DNA of 64,000 nucleotides from Bugula neritina (Eukaryota; Animalia; Bryozoa): NCBI GenBank assembly GCA_964035545.1, contig OZ037767.1, positions 2,305,680 to 2,369,679 on the forward strand, read 5' to 3'. The stretch's first letter is position 1, and each line of letters opens with the position of its first letter. The notes under the pieces are model-generated. The model had not been told where the DNA came from. It saw only the letters and a list, made by a program, of their open reading frames with translations, and ran no database searches. The translations under genes were made by a program, and so were the position numbers. Shown here in pieces: positions 1 to 48,438 of the stretch.

Positions 1-1722
1 CAGTACTTTCCACTTCCAGAGCCCGTCGCGAGTGATGAATGCTGCTTTGTCCTGGGCATCAGGACTGAGGGGTACTTGCCAGTACCCGCTAAGCAGATCC
101 AAAGTACTGAAGTACTTGCTACCCGCGAGGGCATCTAGAGACTCATCTATCCGTGGGAGAGGGTAGGCGTCCTGGATGGTAACGCTGTTGAGTCTGCGGT
201 AGTCCACACAGAATCTCCAGCTACCATCCTTCTTCTTGACCAGGACTACTGGAGAGCTCCACGCACCGTGGGCAGGCTCAATCAGATTCCGGTCGAGAAG
301 ATCCTGTACCTGTCGGCTCACCTCCTTCTCCTTCTCCGGGCCTAGACGCCGGGTAGGCTGCCTAATGGGAGTGGTGCCGGCTGCCAGGGGTATCTCGTGG
401 GAGATGACCTTGGTCAGCCCCATGTCTTCATCGCCACGACTGAAGACATCACTGTACTCTGCAAGTAGTTGAGCCAGTACTTGGCGTTCAGTACTACTGG
501 TACAGTTTCGGCACGCTCCATCGTATAGGTCAGCCACATGCTCCGGGACTGCTCCTCGTCTGGTGTGAGGGGGTTTACCCTGGGTGTCGGCCACTGTCTC
601 CAGTGCCGGACCCACATCCGCTTCCTGGATGGAGTGGTACTTCCCCACCAGCGCTCCGGCCGATAATCGGATAGGTTCCGTGAAGGGGTTGATGCACTGC
701 ACGAGGAGCTCCTGCCGACAATCTAGCCGATTCAGGCTGTTTGCTAGTCGGATCGCTCCGTGCGTTCCCTCAACCACCCCCAGGCCGGCGATCCCTTTGC
801 AGTTGACTCTGCAGCGAAGAGTCGCCTGGGATCTCCCCGGAACCGTGCAGTCCCGCACTACCTGGACTCCGCCCACCAAGGGCCTTCCGAACTTGTCGAC
901 GCAGACAAGCTCCTTCCCAGCCATCACCACCACTGACTTCTGGAAATCCATGTAACACTGGTGTTCCTCCAGAAACGGCATTCCCAGGATGGCGTCCTCC
1001 TTCAGCTGGCTGACTATGAACGTCTCGTGAATTGCTTGATCACGGACGCGTCCAGGTAGTGAAATGACGCCGTAGAAAGGAATGCATGATCCGTCCGCCA
1101 ACGTACCATGCGCACCTTCATACGGCTCGAGGCTCGCCCGCTCTCGTGCACCAAGAGTGTCAAAGAGACGCCTACTCAGCAGGTTGGTAGTGCACCCAGT
1201 ATCCAGTAGGAATGTGGCAGCTTTACCCGAAATCTTTCCGGGCAGGAAGTAGCTGCTTCCATACGGCTGGGTGCTCCTGGAGCGGTCAGTCTCTGGGGGA
1301 GACACAACTTGGGTCCGCACAGCGGGCCTCCTCTTCGTCTTAGAGACAACGGGGGTTTTCTGAGGTCGGGAGGGTAGCTTGGGGTACTCTTGCGAGTAAG
1401 CTGAATCCTCCTCCACAACCTCCTCGGGCAACCCCGCGAACCGGTTACGGAGTGGCCAGGCTGGAGGATCGGGTAGACCTTGCGGTCTCCGAGATCTCCG
1501 AGGTGCCTGCCATCCTGCTTCTTCTAGCTGCATCCGGGTCTCGAGTGACACGGCCGGAGGATCGGGTAGACCTTGCGGTCTCCGAGGTCTCCGTGGCCTC
1601 TGCCACTCGGTATCGGCAGACCCTGTGGAGGTCTCTTCTTCTCCTCTTCGAGTCCTATCCCGGATGGGATTGGCGTGAGGCCCACGGTTGGCGGAAGTTA
1701 CCGTGAGCCTTGGGTGTTTAAA
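1..1722 (-). CDS. pol: Pol polyprotein (aspartic protease + N-terminal half of reverse transcriptase), partial, in -1 frame relative to gag
   Basis: Hand translation is open from ~1722 to the window edge: FLLDTGCTTNLLS (protease), DAILGMPFL, WSSPVVLVKKKDGSWRFCVDYRRLN, DAYPLPRIDESLDALAGSKYFSTLDLLSGYWQVPL (RT). Confidence 0.96.
1658..1722 (-). promoter_or_regulatory. Programmed -1 ribosomal frameshift signal (U UUA AAC slippery heptamer + downstream stem-loop/pseudoknot)
   Basis: Minus strand CCT TTA AAC in gag frame (heptamer 1722-1716); 6-nt spacer; GGCUCACGGU (1709-1700) pairs with ACCGUGGGCC (1688-1679); pol is in the -1 frame. Confidence 0.88.
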
Positions 1723-2603
1723 GGCCCTTGGCCTCTAGGGCAGTGCCTCCTCACGTGCCCATGCGCCCCGCACCCCCAACAGGTTAGCAGAGATGAGCGG
1801 ACAGGGTTGTCCCGTGAATGGGGAGCCCGCCTATCCGCCTGTTCGTTCTGCAACTTCGTCACCGTAGCCTGCAGGCCTTTCATCATGTCCATTAACATGG
1901 TGAGCTGCGTCTGCTCGGGTGATTTAGTTGCAGCTGCTGCTACCTGTGGAGTTGGAAGTGGGGTGGTCTCCTCATGCTCCTCGACCACTTGGCGGGCTGT
2001 ATAGCTCAGTCGCCTAGGCTCTTCCACCTGGAAGTAAGCCTTCCCCATTTCCAGCGCTTCCTCTATACTGTTGACCTTGGCGGCCAGCCAGTATCGCTGC
2101 AGGTCCGGGTGATTCACGCTCCGGAAGAACGCGTTATAAACGAGGCGCTTCCGGTCGTCGCCAGTGGCATGACCGAAAGCAGCCTGAGCCAGGCGCTCTA
2201 CCTCGTTAGCGTGATCTTCCAGAGGAGTCTTCCGGTCTCTCCTCATTATCTGCAAACGATCAGCTGCTTCTTCGGCTGTTAGGCCGAACCGGGCTCTCAG
2301 AGCCCGCATAATGTGCTCTTCATCAGGCCCAAGAGCAAAGCTCTTGGCCCGGCCTGTCAGACAGGCCCGGAGTTGGAGGATGCGCACCCGTACTGGCCAT
2401 TCAGCGATGGTGGCCACATCCTGGAACTCCCTGATGAATTGCTCTACGTCTTCTTCTCCTCCGAAATTCGGGGGCTGGAGGCGATACCTGTCACCAGGTG
2501 ATGCCCGTCCTTGACCCCGCAATCCCTGGAGGGCTGTGACCAGCGCCTCAACCGTGAGGGCTGGTGGTGTTGCTGCCTCAGGGGCTGAGTCCCCTGGGGC
2601 CAT
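1698..2603 (-). CDS. gag: Gypsy Gag (capsid + one CCHC zinc knuckle), 301 aa
   Basis: Intact ORF just downstream of the PBS; PPNFGGEEDVEQFIREF capsid-like start; CWGCGAHGHVRRHC knuckle. Confidence 0.93.
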   Translation of the reverse strand: MAPGDSAPEAATPPALTVEALVTALQGLRGQGRASPGDRYRLQPPNFGGEEDVEQFIREFQDVATIAEWPVRVRILQLRACLTGRAKSFALGPDEEHIMRALRARFGLTAEEAADRLQIMRRDRKTPLEDHANEVERLAQAAFGHATGDDRKRLVYNAFFRSVNHPDLQRYWLAAKVNSIEEALEMGKAYFQVEEPRRLSYTARQVVEEHEETTPLPTPQVAAAATKSPEQTQLTMLMDMMKGLQATVTKLQNEQADRRAPHSRDNPVRSSLLTCWGCGAHGHVRRHCPRGQGPLNTQGSR

Positions 2604-2634
2604 TGCGCGCCGCTCGGCAACTAGTTATTCGAAA

Positions 2635-2652
2635 ATCCCACCGCTGCCACCA
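2635..2652 (-). promoter_or_regulatory. Primer-binding site complementary to tRNA-Leu 3' end
   Basis: TGGTGGCAGCGGTGGGAT 1 nt after the LTR end (...CTACA); complement ATCCCACCGCTGCCA-CCA matches the 3' end of metazoan tRNA-Leu(AAG/UAG). Confidence 0.88.
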
Positions 2653-2653
2653 A

Positions 2654-2984
2654 TGTAGTAAACTGTGGGTTCTGAATGCAACTAGTGCCTACATGCTCTA
2701 GAAAGAATAAGCCAAGTATTTGAGTACAAATGAGGATAACCTTTATTGTATCAGATACAGCTCATGTGGTCCTACTACCAGCGAGCTCCAGTAGTAGTCT
2801 GAATCTACACTGGAAACTCGCCTGCTTTTATACACAAGAATTCACATCTAGAATGTTCCAACAGACAAAAGAAAGTTAAGCTTGACAGTAACAAAAGAAA
2901 AATAGACAAAGGAGAATGAATAATTCAATAGGCCAAGAATTTAGCTATAATAACAACCTATTGAAGGCATTCATAAAAGCTACA
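2654..2984 (-). repeat. 5' LTR (~331 bp)
   Basis: TGTAG...CTACA inverted termini; TATAAAAG at ~2832-2825 and AATAAA at ~2747-2742 on minus strand; abuts PBS. The outer boundary is inferred because the second LTR is not in the window. Confidence 0.72.
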
Positions 2985-3888
2985 CAAATTTCCAGTATCA
3001 GTATTAATGCAAAACGATGAAATAGCAAAAGGGGAAAATAACTCTGGAAATGCGTATTTAATGAAAATTACATTATACTGAAAGCTTAATCACAATAATA
3101 AGGCATTAGAAAGCTAGTGCAACTTAGCTACAATTACAGCATTCAAAATATACGCAACAGTAATTATAATACTGACACACGCAGTTACTTGAAAACAGTA
3201 GAGGATGAGAATCTATCACAATATAATTATATTCATTTGGTTATGATTACACCAATAACTTTTTTAGTTTTAGATTTTTCTTTATGCCAATACGATAGCT
3301 TAAGGTTTTAAATCTTTAAAACAAAGCAGAGCCACTTGTAGCTGAATAGCTTCCTTGTCCACATCTTCAGAATTTAATTATTTAAGGCTTAGCACAATTT
3401 ATGTGTTAACTGTGGGTTACTCCCAGTGATTCACTGGTTTTTATACCACTATTGTGTTACATGTTTCATGCATAAATATACTTTTAGCTGAAATAAAATA
3501 AATACAGGTATGCATGTGTAAACTTTAATAGCACTCATATTTAAATTAGGAGCTGGTTAAAGTATAGTTATGATCAGCCAATACTTCACTAATTTATAAC
3601 ACTAGGTAATACAATTAAGTAAGCTAAAGGAAAATTCTAAATATTAGTTTAAAGCTTAAGATGCAGCACTGCTTACTAATGAGAAGACAACTTTCCTAGA
3701 CTTAAGTTTGCTCTAAATTGGCTTTCTCTTACTTGAATGATAAAATTTAAAAAATGATCGTAGCAACATTTGTTATACTTATGAACATCATTATATTATT
3801 TTTATATCCTATTTAATTACTACAGGCTTTAAGCTTATTCCGCAATGTGTAAAATGTAAAATAGCAGGTTAGTGTTGAAATTTCCCAG

Positions 3889-13097: not shown

Positions 13098-13419
13098 GGC
13101 ATGGCAGCATAAGTTTTAAAAATGAATTACTATCGTAATTTAAAAGTTTATTGTTTATCAAGTTATGATAGAAATCATTGTTCTGTTGACCTAGTAATTT
13201 TTTCCTGAAATATTGTGTATAGATATGTTTACTCTGGCATAACTTTGCTAGCTCAAGTTGCTAGAGACAACAAAAAATCTTGTCATCACTATCCTTTTTT
13301 CAAAATGAATTTTTTTCACAAGTTTCACTGTTTTAATAAAATTAACATTCATCTGTATCATAATTATTTTATTTGCATGCTATTTACAAAGAATAAATGT
13401 GCTTTATTACAGTGCCAAC

Positions 13420-13632
13420 TGTTAGATTACCACAATGTAATAGTATGTCTTACCAGTGATAAAGCTGCTAGATGAAGGCGACTGTTCACTCTGTTTGTCT
13501 GGGTTTTATGTGTCTTAGCTTGTAGCTATCTCAGCTATACGGTGGCTGGTAGGGCAACTCTTAGTAACACGATAGCTCAAGTATCTGATAGGCTATTGTC
13601 ATTAGCTAAACTCTCAGCGTGCCACTATAACA
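13420..13632 (-). repeat. 3' LTR (213 bp)
   Basis: Direct repeat of 16882-17094; preceded on the minus strand by PPT GGAAGGGGG (13643-13635). Confidence 0.97.
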
Positions 13633-13969
13633 TGCCCCCTTCCAATAAAGGCTGGTGACCACCTACTAAAACTAAGCATTTCAATTACATACTATTTCTA
13701 AAAGCTATAAGCTGATGAGTACCACATGTCTGTGGGTAAACTTACTCACCTCTATATGCCAGAAACTGTTAACACAAGCTTTAACTATTTGTAATTTAGT
13801 AGTTCGCGAGTCAGTGTGTCGTTGAGTGTGTGAGTAAATAAGTAGGTGAGTAAGTTAGGTGAGTAGGTTGTTTAGTGTGTCGGTAAGTGTGTAAGTAAGT
13901 GAGTTGGGATCGGAGGATGTTCCCACCCTCTTCTCCCTCAGTCTCAGTTGCCTGAGACTGACCAGAACC

Positions 13970-15011
13970 TCAATGCAGTGCTTCGGGATTAGAAGATGTT
14001 TCCATCTTCACCTCCCCAGTCTCAGTTGCCTGAGGCTGACTAGGACTGTAGGTCGGTCTCAGACCAAGGTCTGAACCACCATGTACACCGGGGGTCTGGG
14101 GCTCTACGGCCATTGACTCCTCCCAAGTGTCGTCCCGAGGGCGACCTGGGGTCGGCGACTCCTCTACGGCCTTTGACTCCTCCTGGTTACCACTGGGACC
14201 TTCCGCAACTGTGGTTGCAGGGTTTAGTATTGTGCTACCCAACCCTCTGGAATGCACGTTGGCCACGCTGGCCCAGTTTTCGATTGCTACTTTAATAGCC
14301 ATTGAGCACTGATACTCCTTTTCCAAGAGACTCTCTCGCTCACTGATCTCTTCCATTTGCCTGTTGAACTTTCGTTGAAGTTCTTGCTTTTCTCTATTTA
14401 ATTCCTCTTTCCTTAGTGCATAAGCCTCCCTATCCAGGAAGTCACACCCCCGTCAAGCCATTCAGGAACCCTGAAACTTCACTGACAATAACATTTTTAG
14501 GCTTTAATGCATGAACATAGCTTGATGATGTAGCTACACCACCAGAGGCAACACTTGCATAGTTTGATTTCTGACTACCTGAAACCTTGGCTAATTTTGG
14601 TGCTGGATCTTGAGAGTCAACACCATCAACAGCCTTCCGCTTGAAGCTAGAAGGTGCGTGACTGCAGTCTGAGGTTTTGTGTTCGGCTGCGACACAACAC
14701 CAACTGCAATAGACTTCTCTGCAGTCCTCCACCCAATGACCCTTCTGCCCACACCTGTAACACTTATTATTGGGACAGTCTCGGGCAGAGTGATCCCTGA
14801 AGCATCTACAGATGGCACACCTAATTGTGCCCTTGTTGCCACATACCTCATGTGGCTTCTTAAGCTTAGCCTTATCTTCTGTATTCTTGGGCTTACCCTG
14901 GGGGTTAGCTACTTTTACCGTTTCTTTATGTCTTCCTGAGGGTCCGACTTTAGACCAAGATTCCATGTCGGGTTCCCCTATACCTTCCTTCTCTTTCTCA
15001 CTATTGCTCAT
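13970..15011 (-). CDS. Accessory ORF2: triple zinc-knuckle + coiled-coil protein, split by a 1-nt frameshift at a G5 run (189 aa as read; ~346 aa if fused)
   Basis: 14442-15011 encodes CAICRCFRDHSARDC, CYRCGQKGHWVEDC, CSWCCVAAEHKTSDC. Removing one base from the C5 run at 14447-14451 joins it to CDFLDREAYALRKEELNREKQELQRKFNRQMEEISERESLLEKEY... ending at 13970. Confidence 0.75.
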
Positions 15012-15200
15012 TGTTTGTCTCTTTCTCTATCTATATATTGTTTTTCTCAAGTTTTCTAAAACGGTATCTATAAAAACACATTATTATTTATACCTCTGCA
15101 TGTTTAGTCTATTAGGAGGTTTGCTTATTCTCCCCCGTCTAGTATGCGTAATTTCTCCTTGTTCAGGAGGAAATAACTTGCTGTCATTGCCATCATATAG

Positions 15201-16337
15201 TCAGCTTGCAAATCTGACTCTCCTATAACCCTTATTCCTATCACTACTCCCACTACTTGACCTATAAGGTTTGGTCTCCCTTTCGGGGCAATCTTTAGTG
15301 GTGTGCCCTCGACAGTTACATATGAAGCACCTTACATCAGGGCAGTCCCTAATTCTATGATCATGTTTTTTACAATGGTAGCAAAGATTTCCTTCTCTTC
15401 TAGGGGAGCTAAACCTTTTAGACCTAGAATGATAGTAACCCGAATTCAGTCTATCTACGAGAGGTTTTTCATCCCTCCTCCTTCGTTGGCTTGAACAGAA
15501 TTTATCCCTACTATTGTAATGTCGTTTACTATGATCATCAGAGCTATTACTAGATCCACTCGAGCTTCTACTTCTATAGTGGTCACTATTCCTAAGGCTA
15601 CTTCTCAAATAAGGTCTCCACTTTATTCTAGATCTCGAAACCCTATTAACAGAATAACTGTCACAGGTGTCACTGCTACTGTTTCTAGTCTGCTTAAGAG
15701 AGCTTACAGCCCCGACTTCTTGTTTGACGTCCACTATTGTCCTAGCTTCATTTAAAAGTAGGTCTGAGTCTCTAGCTAGCTTTTTTGCTTTAAGCTTGGT
15801 ATTTAAGTCGTCCCAGGATAAATCGGGTTCTTGCAATAATTGTCTCCTAGCATTAGTATCGCGCAAGCCATTTACTGCTAAGGCAACACTAAGTCTCCTT
15901 CTAACATCCTCGGTACCAGCACCTAAACCTAATTCTCTACTAAGTTTTTCTACTCTCAGCAAGTATTCTCTTTCATCCTCATCAATGGCCTGTGACACTG
16001 TCACAAACCTCATTGTTTTAACATAAAAGCTATCTGACCTATCATAGTGGCCCCTAAGTAGACCTAATGCTTGCTCATAGCCTTCATTCCCATTGTTTCT
16101 CAAATCAAAGCCAAGAGATTGTAACGTGGCTCTACCATCATTGCCTATTGCGCTCAACAATGCTAACAACTTAGTCCTACCTCTAAATTTATTTACTTCT
16201 ACACCCTCCACTGTCTCTTTTCCCAGATTCAAAGTAGTTAACTCTACTGTTATCTCAAATTGAGCTAGCCAATCATTCCATGATCCTGTCACATCATTAC
16301 AATTCAATTGAAGTCTTGGAAATGAATTTAAATCCAT
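15201..16337 (-). CDS. gag: Gag, Mag-clade-like, two CCHC knuckles, 378 aa
   Basis: WNDWLAQF, LLSAIG, F....Q...E..REYLLRVEKLS, NGLRD...RQLLQEPDLS capsid motifs; Ser/Arg-rich linker; CYHCKKHDHRIRDC and CFICNCRGHTTKDC. Confidence 0.9.
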   Translation of the reverse strand: MDLNSFPRLQLNCNDVTGSWNDWLAQFEITVELTTLNLGKETVEGVEVNKFRGRTKLLALLSAIGNDGRATLQSLGFDLRNNGNEGYEQALGLLRGHYDRSDSFYVKTMRFVTVSQAIDEDEREYLLRVEKLSRELGLGAGTEDVRRRLSVALAVNGLRDTNARRQLLQEPDLSWDDLNTKLKAKKLARDSDLLLNEARTIVDVKQEVGAVSSLKQTRNSSSDTCDSYSVNRVSRSRIKWRPYLRSSLRNSDHYRSRSSSGSSNSSDDHSKRHYNSRDKFCSSQRRRRDEKPLVDRLNSGYYHSRSKRFSSPRREGNLCYHCKKHDHRIRDCPDVRCFICNCRGHTTKDCPERETKPYRSSSGSSDRNKGYRRVRFAS

Positions 16338-16544
16338 GACTTTGTTGTTACAATTCCCTGTGCTACAAAGGTTACTACTTGTACTAGCTTGGAGCCTTGA
16401 TTTACTCGTGTGTTATGTCAAGATGCCAATCACAAAATATCTTAAACACTGAGTATCACTGTTTCGGTCACTTGTTGTAAATGACTGTAGTATCACAGTT
16501 GCCAGCTGTGAATCACGATATCAAATTACGATTATCACTCATTA

Positions 16545-16746
16545 GACTACACTAATAATAACACTACACTAACAATAACACTACACTAACAGTAACACTG
16601 CACCACCAGTAACACTGCACCAACAGTAGCACTGCACCAACAGTAACACTGCACCAACAGTAACACTGCACTACACTACACTACGCTACACTACACTACA
16701 CTACACTACACTACACTACACTACACTACACTACACTACACTACAC
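16545..16746. repeat. Compound tandem repeat in the element's 5' leader (16-bp CACTGCACCAACAGTAA-like units grading into (ACACT)n)
   Basis: Direct inspection. Confidence 0.9.
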
Positions 16747-16867
16747 TTATATTATTATATTATATTCAAAACACTTGCAACTGATAATGATTAATTGAAG
16801 AAAGTACTTATCTATCATCTATAGTTGTAAGGACAGAAAGAGTTTCTCACTGGCAGGTTCGTTAAAA

Positions 16868-16881
16868 TGCTGACTGCGCCA
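16868..16881 (-). promoter_or_regulatory. Primer-binding site, probably tRNA-Ser
   Basis: TGGCGCAGTCAGCA immediately after the 5' LTR; resembles the complement of invertebrate tRNA-Ser 3' end (...GACTGCG-CCA). Confidence 0.7.
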
Positions 16882-17094
16882 TGTTAGATTACCACAATGT
16901 AATAGTATGTCTTACCAGTGATAAAGCTGCTAGATGAAGGCGACCGTTCACTCTGTTTGTCTGGGTTTTATGTGTCTTAGCTTGTAGCTATCTCAGCTAT
17001 ACGGTGGCTGGTAGGGCAACTCTTAGTAACACGATAGCTCAAGTATCTGATAGGCTATTGTCATTAGCTAAACTCTCAGCGTGCCACTATAACA
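16882..17094 (-). repeat. 5' LTR (213 bp)
   Basis: Direct repeat of 13420-13632 (GCGACcGTTC vs GCGACtGTTC the only difference seen). Confidence 0.97.
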
Positions 17095-18298
17095 CCAACC
17101 ATAATTAAGGGTATTCTGTTACTTCAAAATAAATTACAAAAATACAATTTATTTGTAGTTTGAATTATTTAAGTAGAGAGAGATTCTATAACTCCTGCAA
17201 GCACAAAGAGCCACTATGACTTGCTCTCTAATTCTGATGACTTTAGACTTTGCTTGTTTTCAAGTGATACAAAGTAGAAGTTATTTTCCCTTGAAACTCT
17301 TTTATTACCTGGTTTGTGGCTAATCTTTGGAAAAAAGAAATCATTCACTTTGTTTTTCATTGAATAGTATTTTTTATATTATAGATGCAAAGTTAAAATA
17401 AATTAAAAATATTTTTTGACCCAGTTTTTATCGGAAATTTCCATGACTCAACAATACACATAGTGAGAAGATAACTCCATAATAAAAGTAAAATAAAATG
17501 GGCATATTATTATATTGAAAGTTGCACATATTTATTTTTATTAGAAGTAAAAAGTTATAAAGTAAATTTATGCATAGAAATAATAAAAGTAAAATATAAA
17601 TGTATGAAAAATATAAAATTACATAAAACAGATGCATTGAACAAAATTTGAATAGAAAATAAGTTGCATAAGAGTGAATTCATCAGATCTAACAAGGTAC
17701 ACTTGTAATTTCTTTTGCAGGTAAAAATTTGAATGAAAAATCATAAATCAAGTATTTATATTCTCAATTATCAATCTAACTCATGTGTAACCAAAATTCA
17801 TAAACTGGCTTTTAGGTTTGTCAAGAAAGAAAAATGCGATAGTACAATTGACAAGGGAGATAATACAATGACTCAGAGTCTTGTAGTTATAATGATTAAT
17901 AAGGAATCTGATAAGTTCAAAGGATATATTAGCTATCAGTGGAATACACTATAGCTGAGATAGAAAACTATTTTAATATTGTGTTGAAATTGTGATACTT
18001 ATGAAGCCTTATAAGAAAGGGAACATTACTTTCTCCCTATGGTGCGTATGAAACCAATAGCATTTTATGGAATTTTCACTCAGTAAACAATCTTCTATCT
18101 TAATTGGCAAATCATCAAGTTGTGTAAGCTGCATATAAAATTAGATTGCTTTCATAAAAAAAGCTTTTAAAACCCAGTTATGCAAATTTCATTGGATATG
18201 AATATATTCCTCTTATAGTTTTTCAACATGCAAGTACAACCCAGTCATATCGTATATACTACTCAGTTTAAATGTGCAGAAACTGTGCTCTATAAAGT

Positions 18299-47192: not shown

Positions 47193-48438
<1,246 letters not shown>

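What the first reader, a model, noticed from the sequence alone, without database searches (positions are those of the whole stretch)
13420..17094. Very young pol-less LTR retroelement carrying two different zinc-knuckle genes
Seen: 213-bp LTRs differing at one site, a perfect 5-bp TSD (CCAAC), PBS, PPT, an intact 378-aa Mag-type gag and a second CCHC ORF, but no protease, RT, RNaseH or integrase core in 3.7 kb. Known: LTRs are identical at insertion; gag-only non-autonomous elements are described (e.g. plant TR-GAG). Inference: this may be an active satellite element that builds its own capsid, borrows Pol from a helper and keeps an extra RNA-binding gene. A two-gene, pol-less architecture of this kind is not one I recognise.
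Basis: partly seen in the sequence, partly recalled or inferred. Interest (0 to 1): 0.85.

Follow-up and report, generated by a model that had tools for sequence, protein, structure and literature searches.

The report
Pol-deleted copy of three-gene bryozoan retrotransposon
This is a very recently inserted retrotransposon copy in a Bugula-type bryozoan genome that has lost its whole enzyme gene (pol) by an internal deletion. Its "extra" zinc-knuckle gene is the normal, apparently undescribed, third gene of the full-length parent family, and it is frame-broken in this copy.

Summary
Window 13420-17094 is a minus-strand LTR element with 213-bp LTRs (one mismatch), a CCAAC target duplication, a PBS, a PPT, an intact 378-aa gag and no PR/RT/RNaseH/INT.

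- Bugula neritina relatives show the element is an internal-deletion derivative of a ~7-kb Ty3/gypsy family. L001 carries gag, degraded pol and the same 3' "tail" downstream of integrase. L002/L005 carry a different pol deletion.
- The second CCHC ORF is not a satellite's add-on. It is the N-terminal part of the family's own third ORF (ORFx). ORFx has three knuckles, a long helix and an acidic tail, and sits 60-110 nt after pol.
- Five divergent intact gag-pol-ORFx elements from marine metagenomes and sequencing-run assemblies show this architecture.
- In the window ORFx is split by a frame break (ORF2 189 aa + ORF3 128 aa).
- The deletion is in frame. It leaves gag, its conserved TGA-CTA readthrough stop and 38 pol codons.
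- dN/dS is about 0.2-0.35 for gag and for both ORFx halves.

No second copy with the same junction could be searched for, because the source genome is not in any collection. Propagation as a satellite is therefore untested.

Verdict: an ordinary kind of element (a pol-deleted non-autonomous derivative). The parent clade's zinc-knuckle/coiled-coil ORF3 is unnamed in every source queried and absent from the literature searched.

The parts
13415..13419 (.). Target-site duplication CCAAC (left in window; 3' side of the element)
13420..13632 (-). 3' LTR (element sense), 213 bp, TG..CA; the one LTR mismatch is at 13483
13633..13643 (-). Polypurine tract (GGAAGGGGGCA in element sense) abutting the 3' LTR
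13970..14422 (-). C-terminal half of the family's third gene ORFx: coiled-coil helix region plus tail. The listed ORF3 (128 aa) is 13970-14356. It reads in a different frame from ORF2 in this copy. In L002/L005 it is continuous with ORF2.
   Evidence: dN/dS 0.27-0.35
14441..14446 (-). Site of the frame break that splits ORFx. It lies in a short G run. Three other Bugula copies agree with each other and differ from the window here. An assembly error at a homopolymer is not excluded.
14442..15011 (-). ORF2, 189 aa: N-terminal part of ORFx with three CCHC-type knuckles (one canonical, two with a 5-residue spacer) and a KRK motif
   Evidence: dN/dS 0.22-0.29
15012..15083 (-). 72-nt spacer between the pol stop and the ORFx ATG. 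It holds a T-rich tract followed by YAG|AT, an acceptor-like motif also seen in the spacers of L006-L009. This is weak evidence.
15084..15178 (-). Remnant of the last ~30 codons of pol (integrase C-terminal tail ...KPPNRLNMQRYK) plus the pol stop
   Evidence: compare the L006 pol end
15178..15179 (-). Deletion junction. About 3.3 kb (PR-RT-RNaseH-INT; L001 2545-5856) is missing. The deletion is in frame, with no GT..AG and at most 1 nt of microhomology.
15179..15200 (-). First 7 codons of pol (LYDGNDS) after the gag stop
15201..16337 (-). gag, 378 aa, intact: capsid-like helical domain (residues 1-202), disordered basic linker, two CCHC knuckles. It ends in TGA followed by CTA, a readthrough context conserved across the clade.
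   Evidence: dN/dS 0.17-0.31
16338..16868 (-). 5' leader. It contains a 17-nt minisatellite and an (ACACT)n array (16529-16757) that differ from relatives.
16869..16881 (-). Primer-binding site TGGCGCAGTCAGC directly after the 5' LTR
16882..17094 (-). 5' LTR (element sense), 213 bp
17095..17099 (.). Target-site duplication CCAAC (right in window)

Best explanation
The element is an internally deleted, non-autonomous copy of a three-ORF Ty3/gypsy-type LTR retrotransposon family of Bugula.

Full-length family members read: LTR - PBS - gag - UGA readthrough - pol (PR-RT-RNaseH-INT, in the gag frame) - short spacer - ORFx - PPT - LTR. ORFx has three zinc knuckles, a long coiled-coil-like helix and an acidic tail.

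In this copy an in-frame deletion of ~3.3 kb removed essentially all of pol. What remains is gag, its readthrough stop, 38 residual pol codons and ORFx. ORFx is additionally split by a frame break.

The copy integrated very recently: LTRs differ at 1 of 213 sites and the TSD is perfect.

Inferred, not shown:
- The deletion arose before or during the reverse transcription that made this copy, either by RT template switching or by copying an already deleted RNA. In that case RT and integrase came from a pol-competent family member.
- ORFx is an RNA-binding, oligomerising accessory protein for the element's genomic RNA (chaperone, export or packaging). It is probably translated from a subgenomic spliced mRNA.

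The copy retains what is needed to be mobilised in trans: LTRs, PBS, PPT, leader and intact Gag. It cannot move by itself.
For: Deletion derivative:
- Element (sense) positions 507-1916 align to L001 1190-2544, and 1917-3672 align to L001 5857-7619.
- L001 2545-5856 encodes RT, RNaseH and rve. It is ~55% identical to an intact pol.
- L002/L005 has a different deletion, lacking L001 2835-5148.
- The junction has no intron ends.

ORFx is native to the family:
- It lies downstream of pol in L001 and L004.
- It lies downstream of pol in intact L006, L007, L008, L009 and a Logan contig, always 60-110 nt after pol.
- About 25 stand-alone proteins of 360-440 aa share the knuckle array plus the region just downstream of it. 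The 13 aligned ones share the full layout of knuckles, KVxSFL motif, helix and acidic tail.
- ORF2 and ORF3 form one frame in L002.

Selection: dN/dS is 0.17-0.35 for gag and for both ORFx halves between Bugula copies.

Readthrough: TGA-CTA is conserved at the gag end in 7 of 7 elements, with pol in the same frame.

Gag: open. The predicted fold's best PDB matches are PNMA/MOAP1, Copia, HIV and HERV-K capsids.

ORFx structure: knuckles at pLDDT 80-86, a helix at residues 198-263 at pLDDT 96-98, and the remainder disordered. The knuckles match Air2, Lin28 and HIV NC.

Youth: 1 of 213 LTR sites differ and the TSD is perfect.
Against: - Only one copy with this junction is known. The source genome could not be searched, so a post-integration genomic deletion cannot be excluded.
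- No intact helper was found in Bugula. L001 is old and degraded, with LTRs 78% alike and many stops.
- ORFx function and splicing are inferences from domain make-up and a weak acceptor-like motif. No RNA data were available.
- All four Bugula ORFx copies seen are damaged.
- The fold matches for Gag have weak E-values (>= 0.03).
Confidence: 0.78

Rival explanations
1. One reading: a self-maintaining satellite lineage. The 3.7-kb gag+ORFx form is a master that amplifies as a unit, building its own capsid and borrowing Pol from a helper.
For: The insertion is very young, with intact cis signals and an intact gag under purifying selection. The deletion is in frame and spares the gag stop context. 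Deleted forms recur in the family. Such lineages exist elsewhere, for example mouse IAP I-delta-1 and ETn/MusD (PMC6466679), and plant TR-GAG (own knowledge).
Against: No second copy with the junction was found. The junction scan gave 0 hits, and none of the 42 gag relatives in the 5.8-billion-cluster protein database that were followed up carries it. These collections do not hold the source genome, so this is weak. ORFx is frame-broken here, so the 'kept' second gene is not intact. dN/dS between copies reflects selection on the whole family's history, not on the deleted lineage.
Confidence: 0.2
2. One-off genomic deletion after integration: a full-length element inserted here and pol was later lost by illegitimate recombination or NHEJ.
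For: The junction has at most 1 nt of microhomology and no special signature. This copy also carries another small lesion, the frame break. Old relatives show many indels.
Against: Very little time has passed since insertion (1 LTR difference in 213 bp). A 3.3-kb loss would have to fall inside that window, stay within the internal region and happen to be in frame. Reverse-transcription template switching is a well-established, frequent source of deleted proviruses (established knowledge).
Confidence: 0.3
3. ORF2 is a host zinc-knuckle gene fragment captured (transduced) by this particular element.
For: Its only matches in solved structures are to cellular and viral CCHC knuckle arrays such as Air2 and Lin28. 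One B. neritina gene model ('nape-2', P0044) contains an ORF2-like stretch.
Against: The same ORF sits after pol in every full-length relative, including elements whose gag is only 33-46% identical. The 'nape-2' match lies inside a fragment of this same retroelement in L004, so that gene model is chimeric.
Confidence: 0.03

Closest known systems
Mouse IAP I-delta-1 elements (and ETn/MusD pairs)
   Same: Internally deleted LTR retroelements. They keep LTRs, PBS, PPT and part of the coding region, and rely on full-length relatives for enzymes (PMC6466679).
   Different: The IAP I-delta-1 deletion fuses gag to pol, and the form is proven multi-copy and active. Here the whole of pol is gone, gag is untouched, and only one copy is known.
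Plant TR-GAG / BARE2-type non-autonomous LTR retrotransposons
   Different: Those are established multi-copy plant families. This is a single animal copy that also carries the remains of a third gene.
LTR retrotransposons with a non-env ORF3: Cer1 CERV in C. elegans (PMC10309623); rotifer Vesta/Juno-type ORF3s (PMC5408684); plant additional ORFs
   Same: [quoted passage not shown] CERV is nuclear, has a KRKK NLS and a helical zipper, and is made from a spliced mRNA to export genomic RNA. The layout and the suspected role are comparable.
   Different: CERV is described as having no homologues outside nematodes and no CCHC knuckle array. The rotifer ORF3s are env, GDSL lipase or DEDDy exonuclease. 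None is a triple CCHC knuckle plus coiled coil.
Non-LTR retrotransposon ORF1 proteins (LINE-1 ORF1p coiled coil; I-factor/Jockey-type CCHC ORF1)
   Same: They combine an oligomerising coiled coil and/or CCHC knuckles to form an RNA chaperone that coats the element's RNA (own knowledge).
   Different: A different element class, with the gene at the 5' end. No sequence relationship was shown here.

Membership tests
LTR retrotransposon, Ty3/gypsy (Metaviridae) type | Direct LTRs ending TG...CA, flanked by a 4-6 bp target-site duplication | tested here: met
   213-bp LTRs, TG..CA, TSD CCAAC
LTR retrotransposon, Ty3/gypsy (Metaviridae) type | PBS next to the 5' LTR and PPT next to the 3' LTR | tested here: met
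   TGG-initiated 13-nt PBS and an 11-nt purine tract at the expected positions. The priming tRNA was not identified, because no tRNA gene occurs in the window or the loci.
LTR retrotransposon, Ty3/gypsy (Metaviridae) type | pol with domain order PR-RT-RNaseH-INT | tested here: not met
   Absent from the window copy. Present in that order in relatives L006, L008, the Logan contig and, degraded, L001. The family qualifies; this copy is a defective member.
LTR retrotransposon, Ty3/gypsy (Metaviridae) type | Gag with a capsid-like domain and CCHC nucleocapsid | tested here: met
   Two CCHC knuckles. The best PDB matches of the AF2 model are retroelement capsids: MOAP1 CA-CTD TM 0.77, then Copia, HIV and PNMA2 (weak E-values).
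   No reference Mag, SURL or GyDB sequences are available. Relatives' gag gives only weak PNMA_C Pfam hits.
Propagating non-autonomous deletion family (IAP I-delta-1 / TR-GAG type) | Several copies share the same internal junction but have different insertion sites and TSDs | tested here: inconclusive
   The junction pattern gave 0 hits in JGI metagenome contigs. gag scans of the metagenome, genome and viral collections gave 0. The window's proteins are not in the 15-billion-protein collection. The source genome is not searchable here.
TRIM / LARD non-autonomous elements | No protein-coding capacity in the internal region | tested here: not met
   Intact 378-aa gag plus ORFx remains
Env-carrying errantivirus-like elements | ORF3 is a membrane fusion glycoprotein (signal peptide, TM helix, F- or gB-type fold) | tested here: not met
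   ORFx has only zf-CCHC Pfam hits. The AF2 model shows knuckles, one long amphipathic helix and disordered Gly-rich and acidic ends. Fold matches are to knuckles only.
Cer1 CERV-like accessory gene | [quoted passage not shown] | not testable with these tools
   The position is met. Splicing and function need RNA data and experiments. Only an acceptor-like motif in 5 of 5 spacers was seen. No CERV sequence was compared.

The most novel reading that the evidence does not exclude
The triple-knuckle/coiled-coil ORFx is an undescribed, clade-defining third gene of a widespread marine-invertebrate Ty3/gypsy lineage. It would be a Rev/CERV-like or ORF1p-like RNA handler made from a subgenomic mRNA. 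The gag+ORFx, pol-less form seen here would be a propagating satellite that parasitises full-length elements for Pol.
Probability: 0.12. Interest if true: 0.7.

Novelty: new variant of a known kind. Interest (0 to 1): 0.4.

Why it matters
The pol-less copy itself is an ordinary product of retroelement replication. Its main value is as a marker of very recent retrotransposition in a bryozoan genome.

The more useful result is what it pointed to. A family of Ty3/gypsy elements, found in Bugula and in at least five divergent intact elements from marine metagenomes and sequencing-run assemblies, carries a conserved third gene. That gene encodes a zinc-knuckle array, a long helix and an acidic tail. 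It has no name in any source queried and no match in the literature searched.

Accessory genes of LTR retrotransposons other than env are few and mostly uncharacterised; Cer1 CERV is the only one with a demonstrated role. A second, widely distributed non-env ORF3 with clear nucleic-acid-binding features would therefore be a tractable case for asking how such elements handle their genomic RNA.

The conserved UGA-CUA gag/pol boundary is also a clean natural example of programmed stop-codon readthrough.

Tried and rejected
1. Deletion as a retro-copied splice product: rejected. The missing segment has no GT..AG ends.
2. Junction-specific scan of JGI metagenome contigs: 0 hits.
3. gag-based search for related loci in the metagenome, genome and viral collections: no relatives. 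Even the JGI-derived loci fetched by another route (L001, L002) were not returned, so these zeros say little.
4. ORFx profile (A4) in the search for homologous proteins: the candidate list was swamped by low-complexity words. It returned only two query members.
P0051 in viral contigs: nothing.
6. Names or organisms for 20 ORFx-family proteins: none carry any name.
7. Fold search of the ORFx model: only the knuckles match.
8. Search for the priming tRNA: no tRNA genes in the window or in 8 loci. The PBS resembles a tRNA-Ser 3' end from memory only, which is not tested.
9. P0045 (96% identical to the ORF2 N-terminus) turned out to be the L002/L005 locus again.
10. Host-gene capture of ORF2: rejected (see rivals).
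11. Pfam on neighbouring window ORFs, to identify the host gene context: no hits.
12. ORF2 and ORF3 were searched as separate pieces.
Full report
**1. Observation**

Window 13420-17094 is bounded by two 213-bp direct repeats, 13420-13632 and 16882-17094. They differ at one position, 13483 T versus 16945 C. They begin TG and end CA, and are flanked by CCAAC on both sides. A 28-nt LTR probe occurs only at these two places in the 64-kb window, against 0 expected by chance.

The coding strand is the minus strand. In element sense:
- The 5' LTR (17094..16882) is followed directly by TGGCGCAGTCAGC, a TGG-initiated primer-binding site (reverse complement of 16869-16881).
- The 3' LTR is preceded by GGAAGGGGGCA, a polypurine tract (reverse complement of 13633-13643).

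The open reading frames are gag (16337..15201, 378 aa), ORF2 (15011..14442, 189 aa) and ORF3 (14356..13970, 128 aa). Pfam finds zf-CCHC in gag and in ORF2, and nothing in ORF3. An intact relative's pol gives no tblastn hit inside the element.

**2. Host and relatives**

- A gag search found 42 relatives. The closest were 81-90% identical.
- Their contigs come from JGI samples whose contig prefix is AY690838. That is the accession of the Bugula neritina mitochondrial genome (PMC2678162). One more comes from a Logan run.
- An ORF2 search hit a B. neritina gene model ('nape-2') on GCA_010799875.2.
- The family is therefore a Bugula retroelement, and the window most likely comes from B. neritina or a close relative.
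- The window's own three proteins are not in the 15-billion-protein collection. The source assembly is therefore not searchable here.

**3. A deletion derivative**

Coordinates below are element sense, where position = 17095 minus the window coordinate.
- Positions 507-1916 align to L001 1190-2544, and positions 1917-3672 align to L001 5857-7619.
- The 3.3 kb of L001 in between carries RVT_1, RT_RNaseH and rve hits. It is ~55% identical at protein level to an intact pol.
- L001 is thus an old, degraded full-length relative of ~7 kb. Its LTRs are only 78% alike. The window's 3' 'tail' lies downstream of L001's integrase.
- L002/L005 are the same locus in two samples, 99.9% identical. They are 92-93% identical to the window element and lack a different segment, L001 2835-5148, while keeping the protease.
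- Two independent pol deletions among the few copies sampled show that the family readily throws off deleted forms.
- The window junction (window 15179/15178) has no GT..AG and at most 1 nt of microhomology. It is a plain deletion, not a retro-copied splice.
- The deletion is in frame. After the gag stop come seven pol N-terminal codons (LYDGNDS), one hybrid codon and 30 pol C-terminal codons ending ...KPPNRLNMQRYK. This matches the end of intact pol in L006...VKPPDRSGYVYYK.

**4. The second zinc-knuckle gene**

- In L002/L005 the regions homologous to ORF2 and ORF3 form one continuous frame of about 330 aa, interrupted there by two stop codons.
- In the window they are in different frames. 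The break lies in a short G run at 14441-14446, where the three other Bugula copies agree with each other. An assembly error at a homopolymer is possible.
- An exhaustive phmmer search of 1.84 billion representatives with ORF2 found about 25 stand-alone proteins of 360-440 aa at 31-46% identity. These match through the knuckle array and beyond it. The remaining hits were generic CCHC proteins.
- The alignment shows a shared layout:
 - a Gly-rich N-terminus;
 - three knuckles, the middle one canonical CX2CX4HX4C;
 - a KRK motif;
 - a conserved KVxSFL motif;
 - a heptad-rich helix;
 - an acidic tail.
- The Bugula ORF2 and ORF3 together cover this whole layout.
- AlphaFold2 on an intact member with 15 sequences gives confident knuckles (pLDDT 80-86) and a 66-residue helix (pLDDT 96-98). 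Everything else is disordered.
- PDB sequence and fold searches match only the knuckles: Air2, Lin28 and HIV NC.

**5. Genomic context of the ORFx family**

Contigs encoding these proteins were fetched.
- L006 is a Tara Oceans scaffold. It carries gag (380 aa), pol (1083 aa, PR-RT-RNaseH-INT) and ORFx (393 aa), all open.
- L007, L008 and L009 show pol-ORFx-(LTR)-gag-pol, because the assemblies collapsed the LTRs into a circle.
- A Logan contig has gag 377, pol 1058 and ORFx 470.
- The spacer between the pol stop and the ORFx ATG is 60-110 nt in all of them. It is 72 nt in the window.
- Their gag proteins are 33-49% identical to each other and to the window's gag. Their ORFx proteins are 30-40% identical over the longer alignments.
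- ORFx is therefore the native third gene of an autonomous clade. It is neither an addition peculiar to a satellite nor a captured host gene.
- The 'nape-2' match lies inside a 3' fragment of this retroelement in L004. That gene model is chimeric.

**6. Expression signals**

- In all seven elements where the gag end can be read, gag stops at TGA followed by CTA, and pol continues in the same frame. The seven are the window, L002, L003 and L006-L009.
- UGA-CUA(G) is a known readthrough-prone context (own knowledge). Gag-Pol is therefore most likely made by stop-codon readthrough.
- Each pol-ORFx spacer has a T-rich tract followed by YAG|AT. The window leader has a GTGAGA about 20 nt after the PBS. 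This is compatible with a spliced subgenomic ORFx mRNA, as for retroviral env or Cer1 cerv (PMC10309623).
- Such motifs are common by chance. I rate this as a lead only.

**7. Selection**

Nei-Gojobori dN/dS was computed between the window copy and other Bugula copies, skipping gapped and stop codons:
- gag: 0.17-0.31;
- ORF2 part: 0.22-0.29;
- ORF3 part: 0.27-0.35.

Both halves of ORFx have thus diverged mostly under purifying selection, as gag has. This fits a functional gene in the active lineages. It says nothing specific about the deleted lineage. All four Bugula ORFx copies seen carry lesions.

**8. Gag**

The AF2 model, built from 22 sequences, has a helical domain over residues 1-202 at pLDDT ~70-89. 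This is followed by a disordered Ser/Arg-rich linker and then two knuckles. Its best PDB fold matches are all retroelement capsids: MOAP1/PNMA CA-CTD (TM 0.77 on the target), Copia, HIV-1, HERV-K and PNMA2. Their E-values are weak. The copy can plausibly still make a capsid protein.

**9. How it most likely arose and works**

Shown:
- a pol-deleted copy of a three-ORF family;
- complete cis signals;
- an intact gag;
- a broken ORFx;
- a very recent insertion.

Inferred: the LTRs have had time for only one substitution. A 3.3-kb genomic deletion confined to the interior within that time is less likely than a deletion made during reverse transcription, or inheritance from an already deleted RNA. 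Either way, Pol came from a competent family member. My estimates are:
- about 0.3 for a post-integration deletion;
- about 0.2 for a true propagating satellite lineage;
- the rest for a copy born deleted and not further amplified.

The data here cannot separate these, because no collection available holds the source genome.

ORFx function, as an RNA-binding and oligomerising accessory factor, is inferred from its domains only.

**10. Comparison with what is known**

- Deleted non-autonomous LTR elements that keep part of their coding capacity are well known: IAP I-delta-1 and ETn/MusD (PMC6466679), and TR-GAG in plants.
- Extra ORFs after pol are also known. Examples are env in errantiviruses (PMC13524379); env, GDSL or DEDDy ORF3s in rotifers (PMC5408684); CERV in Cer1 (PMC10309623); and additional ORFs in plants.
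- None of the papers found describes a triple-CCHC plus coiled-coil ORF3.
- None of 20 ORFx-family proteins carries a name in any source.
- Repbase, Dfam and GyDB could not be consulted. 'Undescribed' therefore remains provisional, and 'Mag-type' is untested.

**11. Constraints observed**

- ORF2 and ORF3 were searched as separate pieces.
- The direction of the frame lesion is not given.
- A bench step that would require restoring an active element is referred.

Noticed in passing
window 15198-15206 and L002, L003, L006-L009 gag ends: The gag stop codon is TGA followed by CTA in all seven elements, with pol in the same frame. This is a conserved stop-codon readthrough context for Gag-Pol.
   Followed up: partly
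window 16529-16757: The element's 5' leader holds a 17-nt minisatellite (about 7 copies) that grades into an (ACACT)n array. Relatives align on both sides of it but not across it, so the leader carries a variable tandem array.
   Followed up: no
window 7-393 (-), and the GC-rich first 2 kb (59% GC versus ~32% elsewhere): A reverse-transcriptase fragment, 33% identical to L006 pol residues 132-263, from a different retroelement. The adjacent 301-aa ORF 1698-2603(-) has no Pfam hit.
   Followed up: no
L004 9585-11440 (B. neritina VXIV02002190.1): The annotated B. neritina protein 'nape-2' (P0044, Lactamase_B_2 domain) includes a stretch 78% identical to ORF2. That stretch lies inside a 3' fragment of this retroelement, so the gene model looks chimeric with transposon sequence.
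   Followed up: partly
L002 5179-6823 (-) / L005 4398-5952 (-): Immediately downstream of the L002 element lies an RT/RNaseH fragment of another, distant Ty3/gypsy family on the opposite strand, about 33% identical to L006 pol. This looks like a nest of retroelement debris.
   Followed up: no
window 47197-48437: A perfect 1.24-kb (AC)n microsatellite, about 620 repeats. It produces the long spurious ORFs listed there.
   Followed up: no
L006 5370-5446, L007 1824-1888, L008 4287-4401, L009 836-923, window 15012-15086: Every pol-ORFx spacer has a T-rich tract ending in YAG followed by AT, a few to some 70 nt after the pol stop. This is a possible conserved splice acceptor for a subgenomic ORFx mRNA.
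   Followed up: partly
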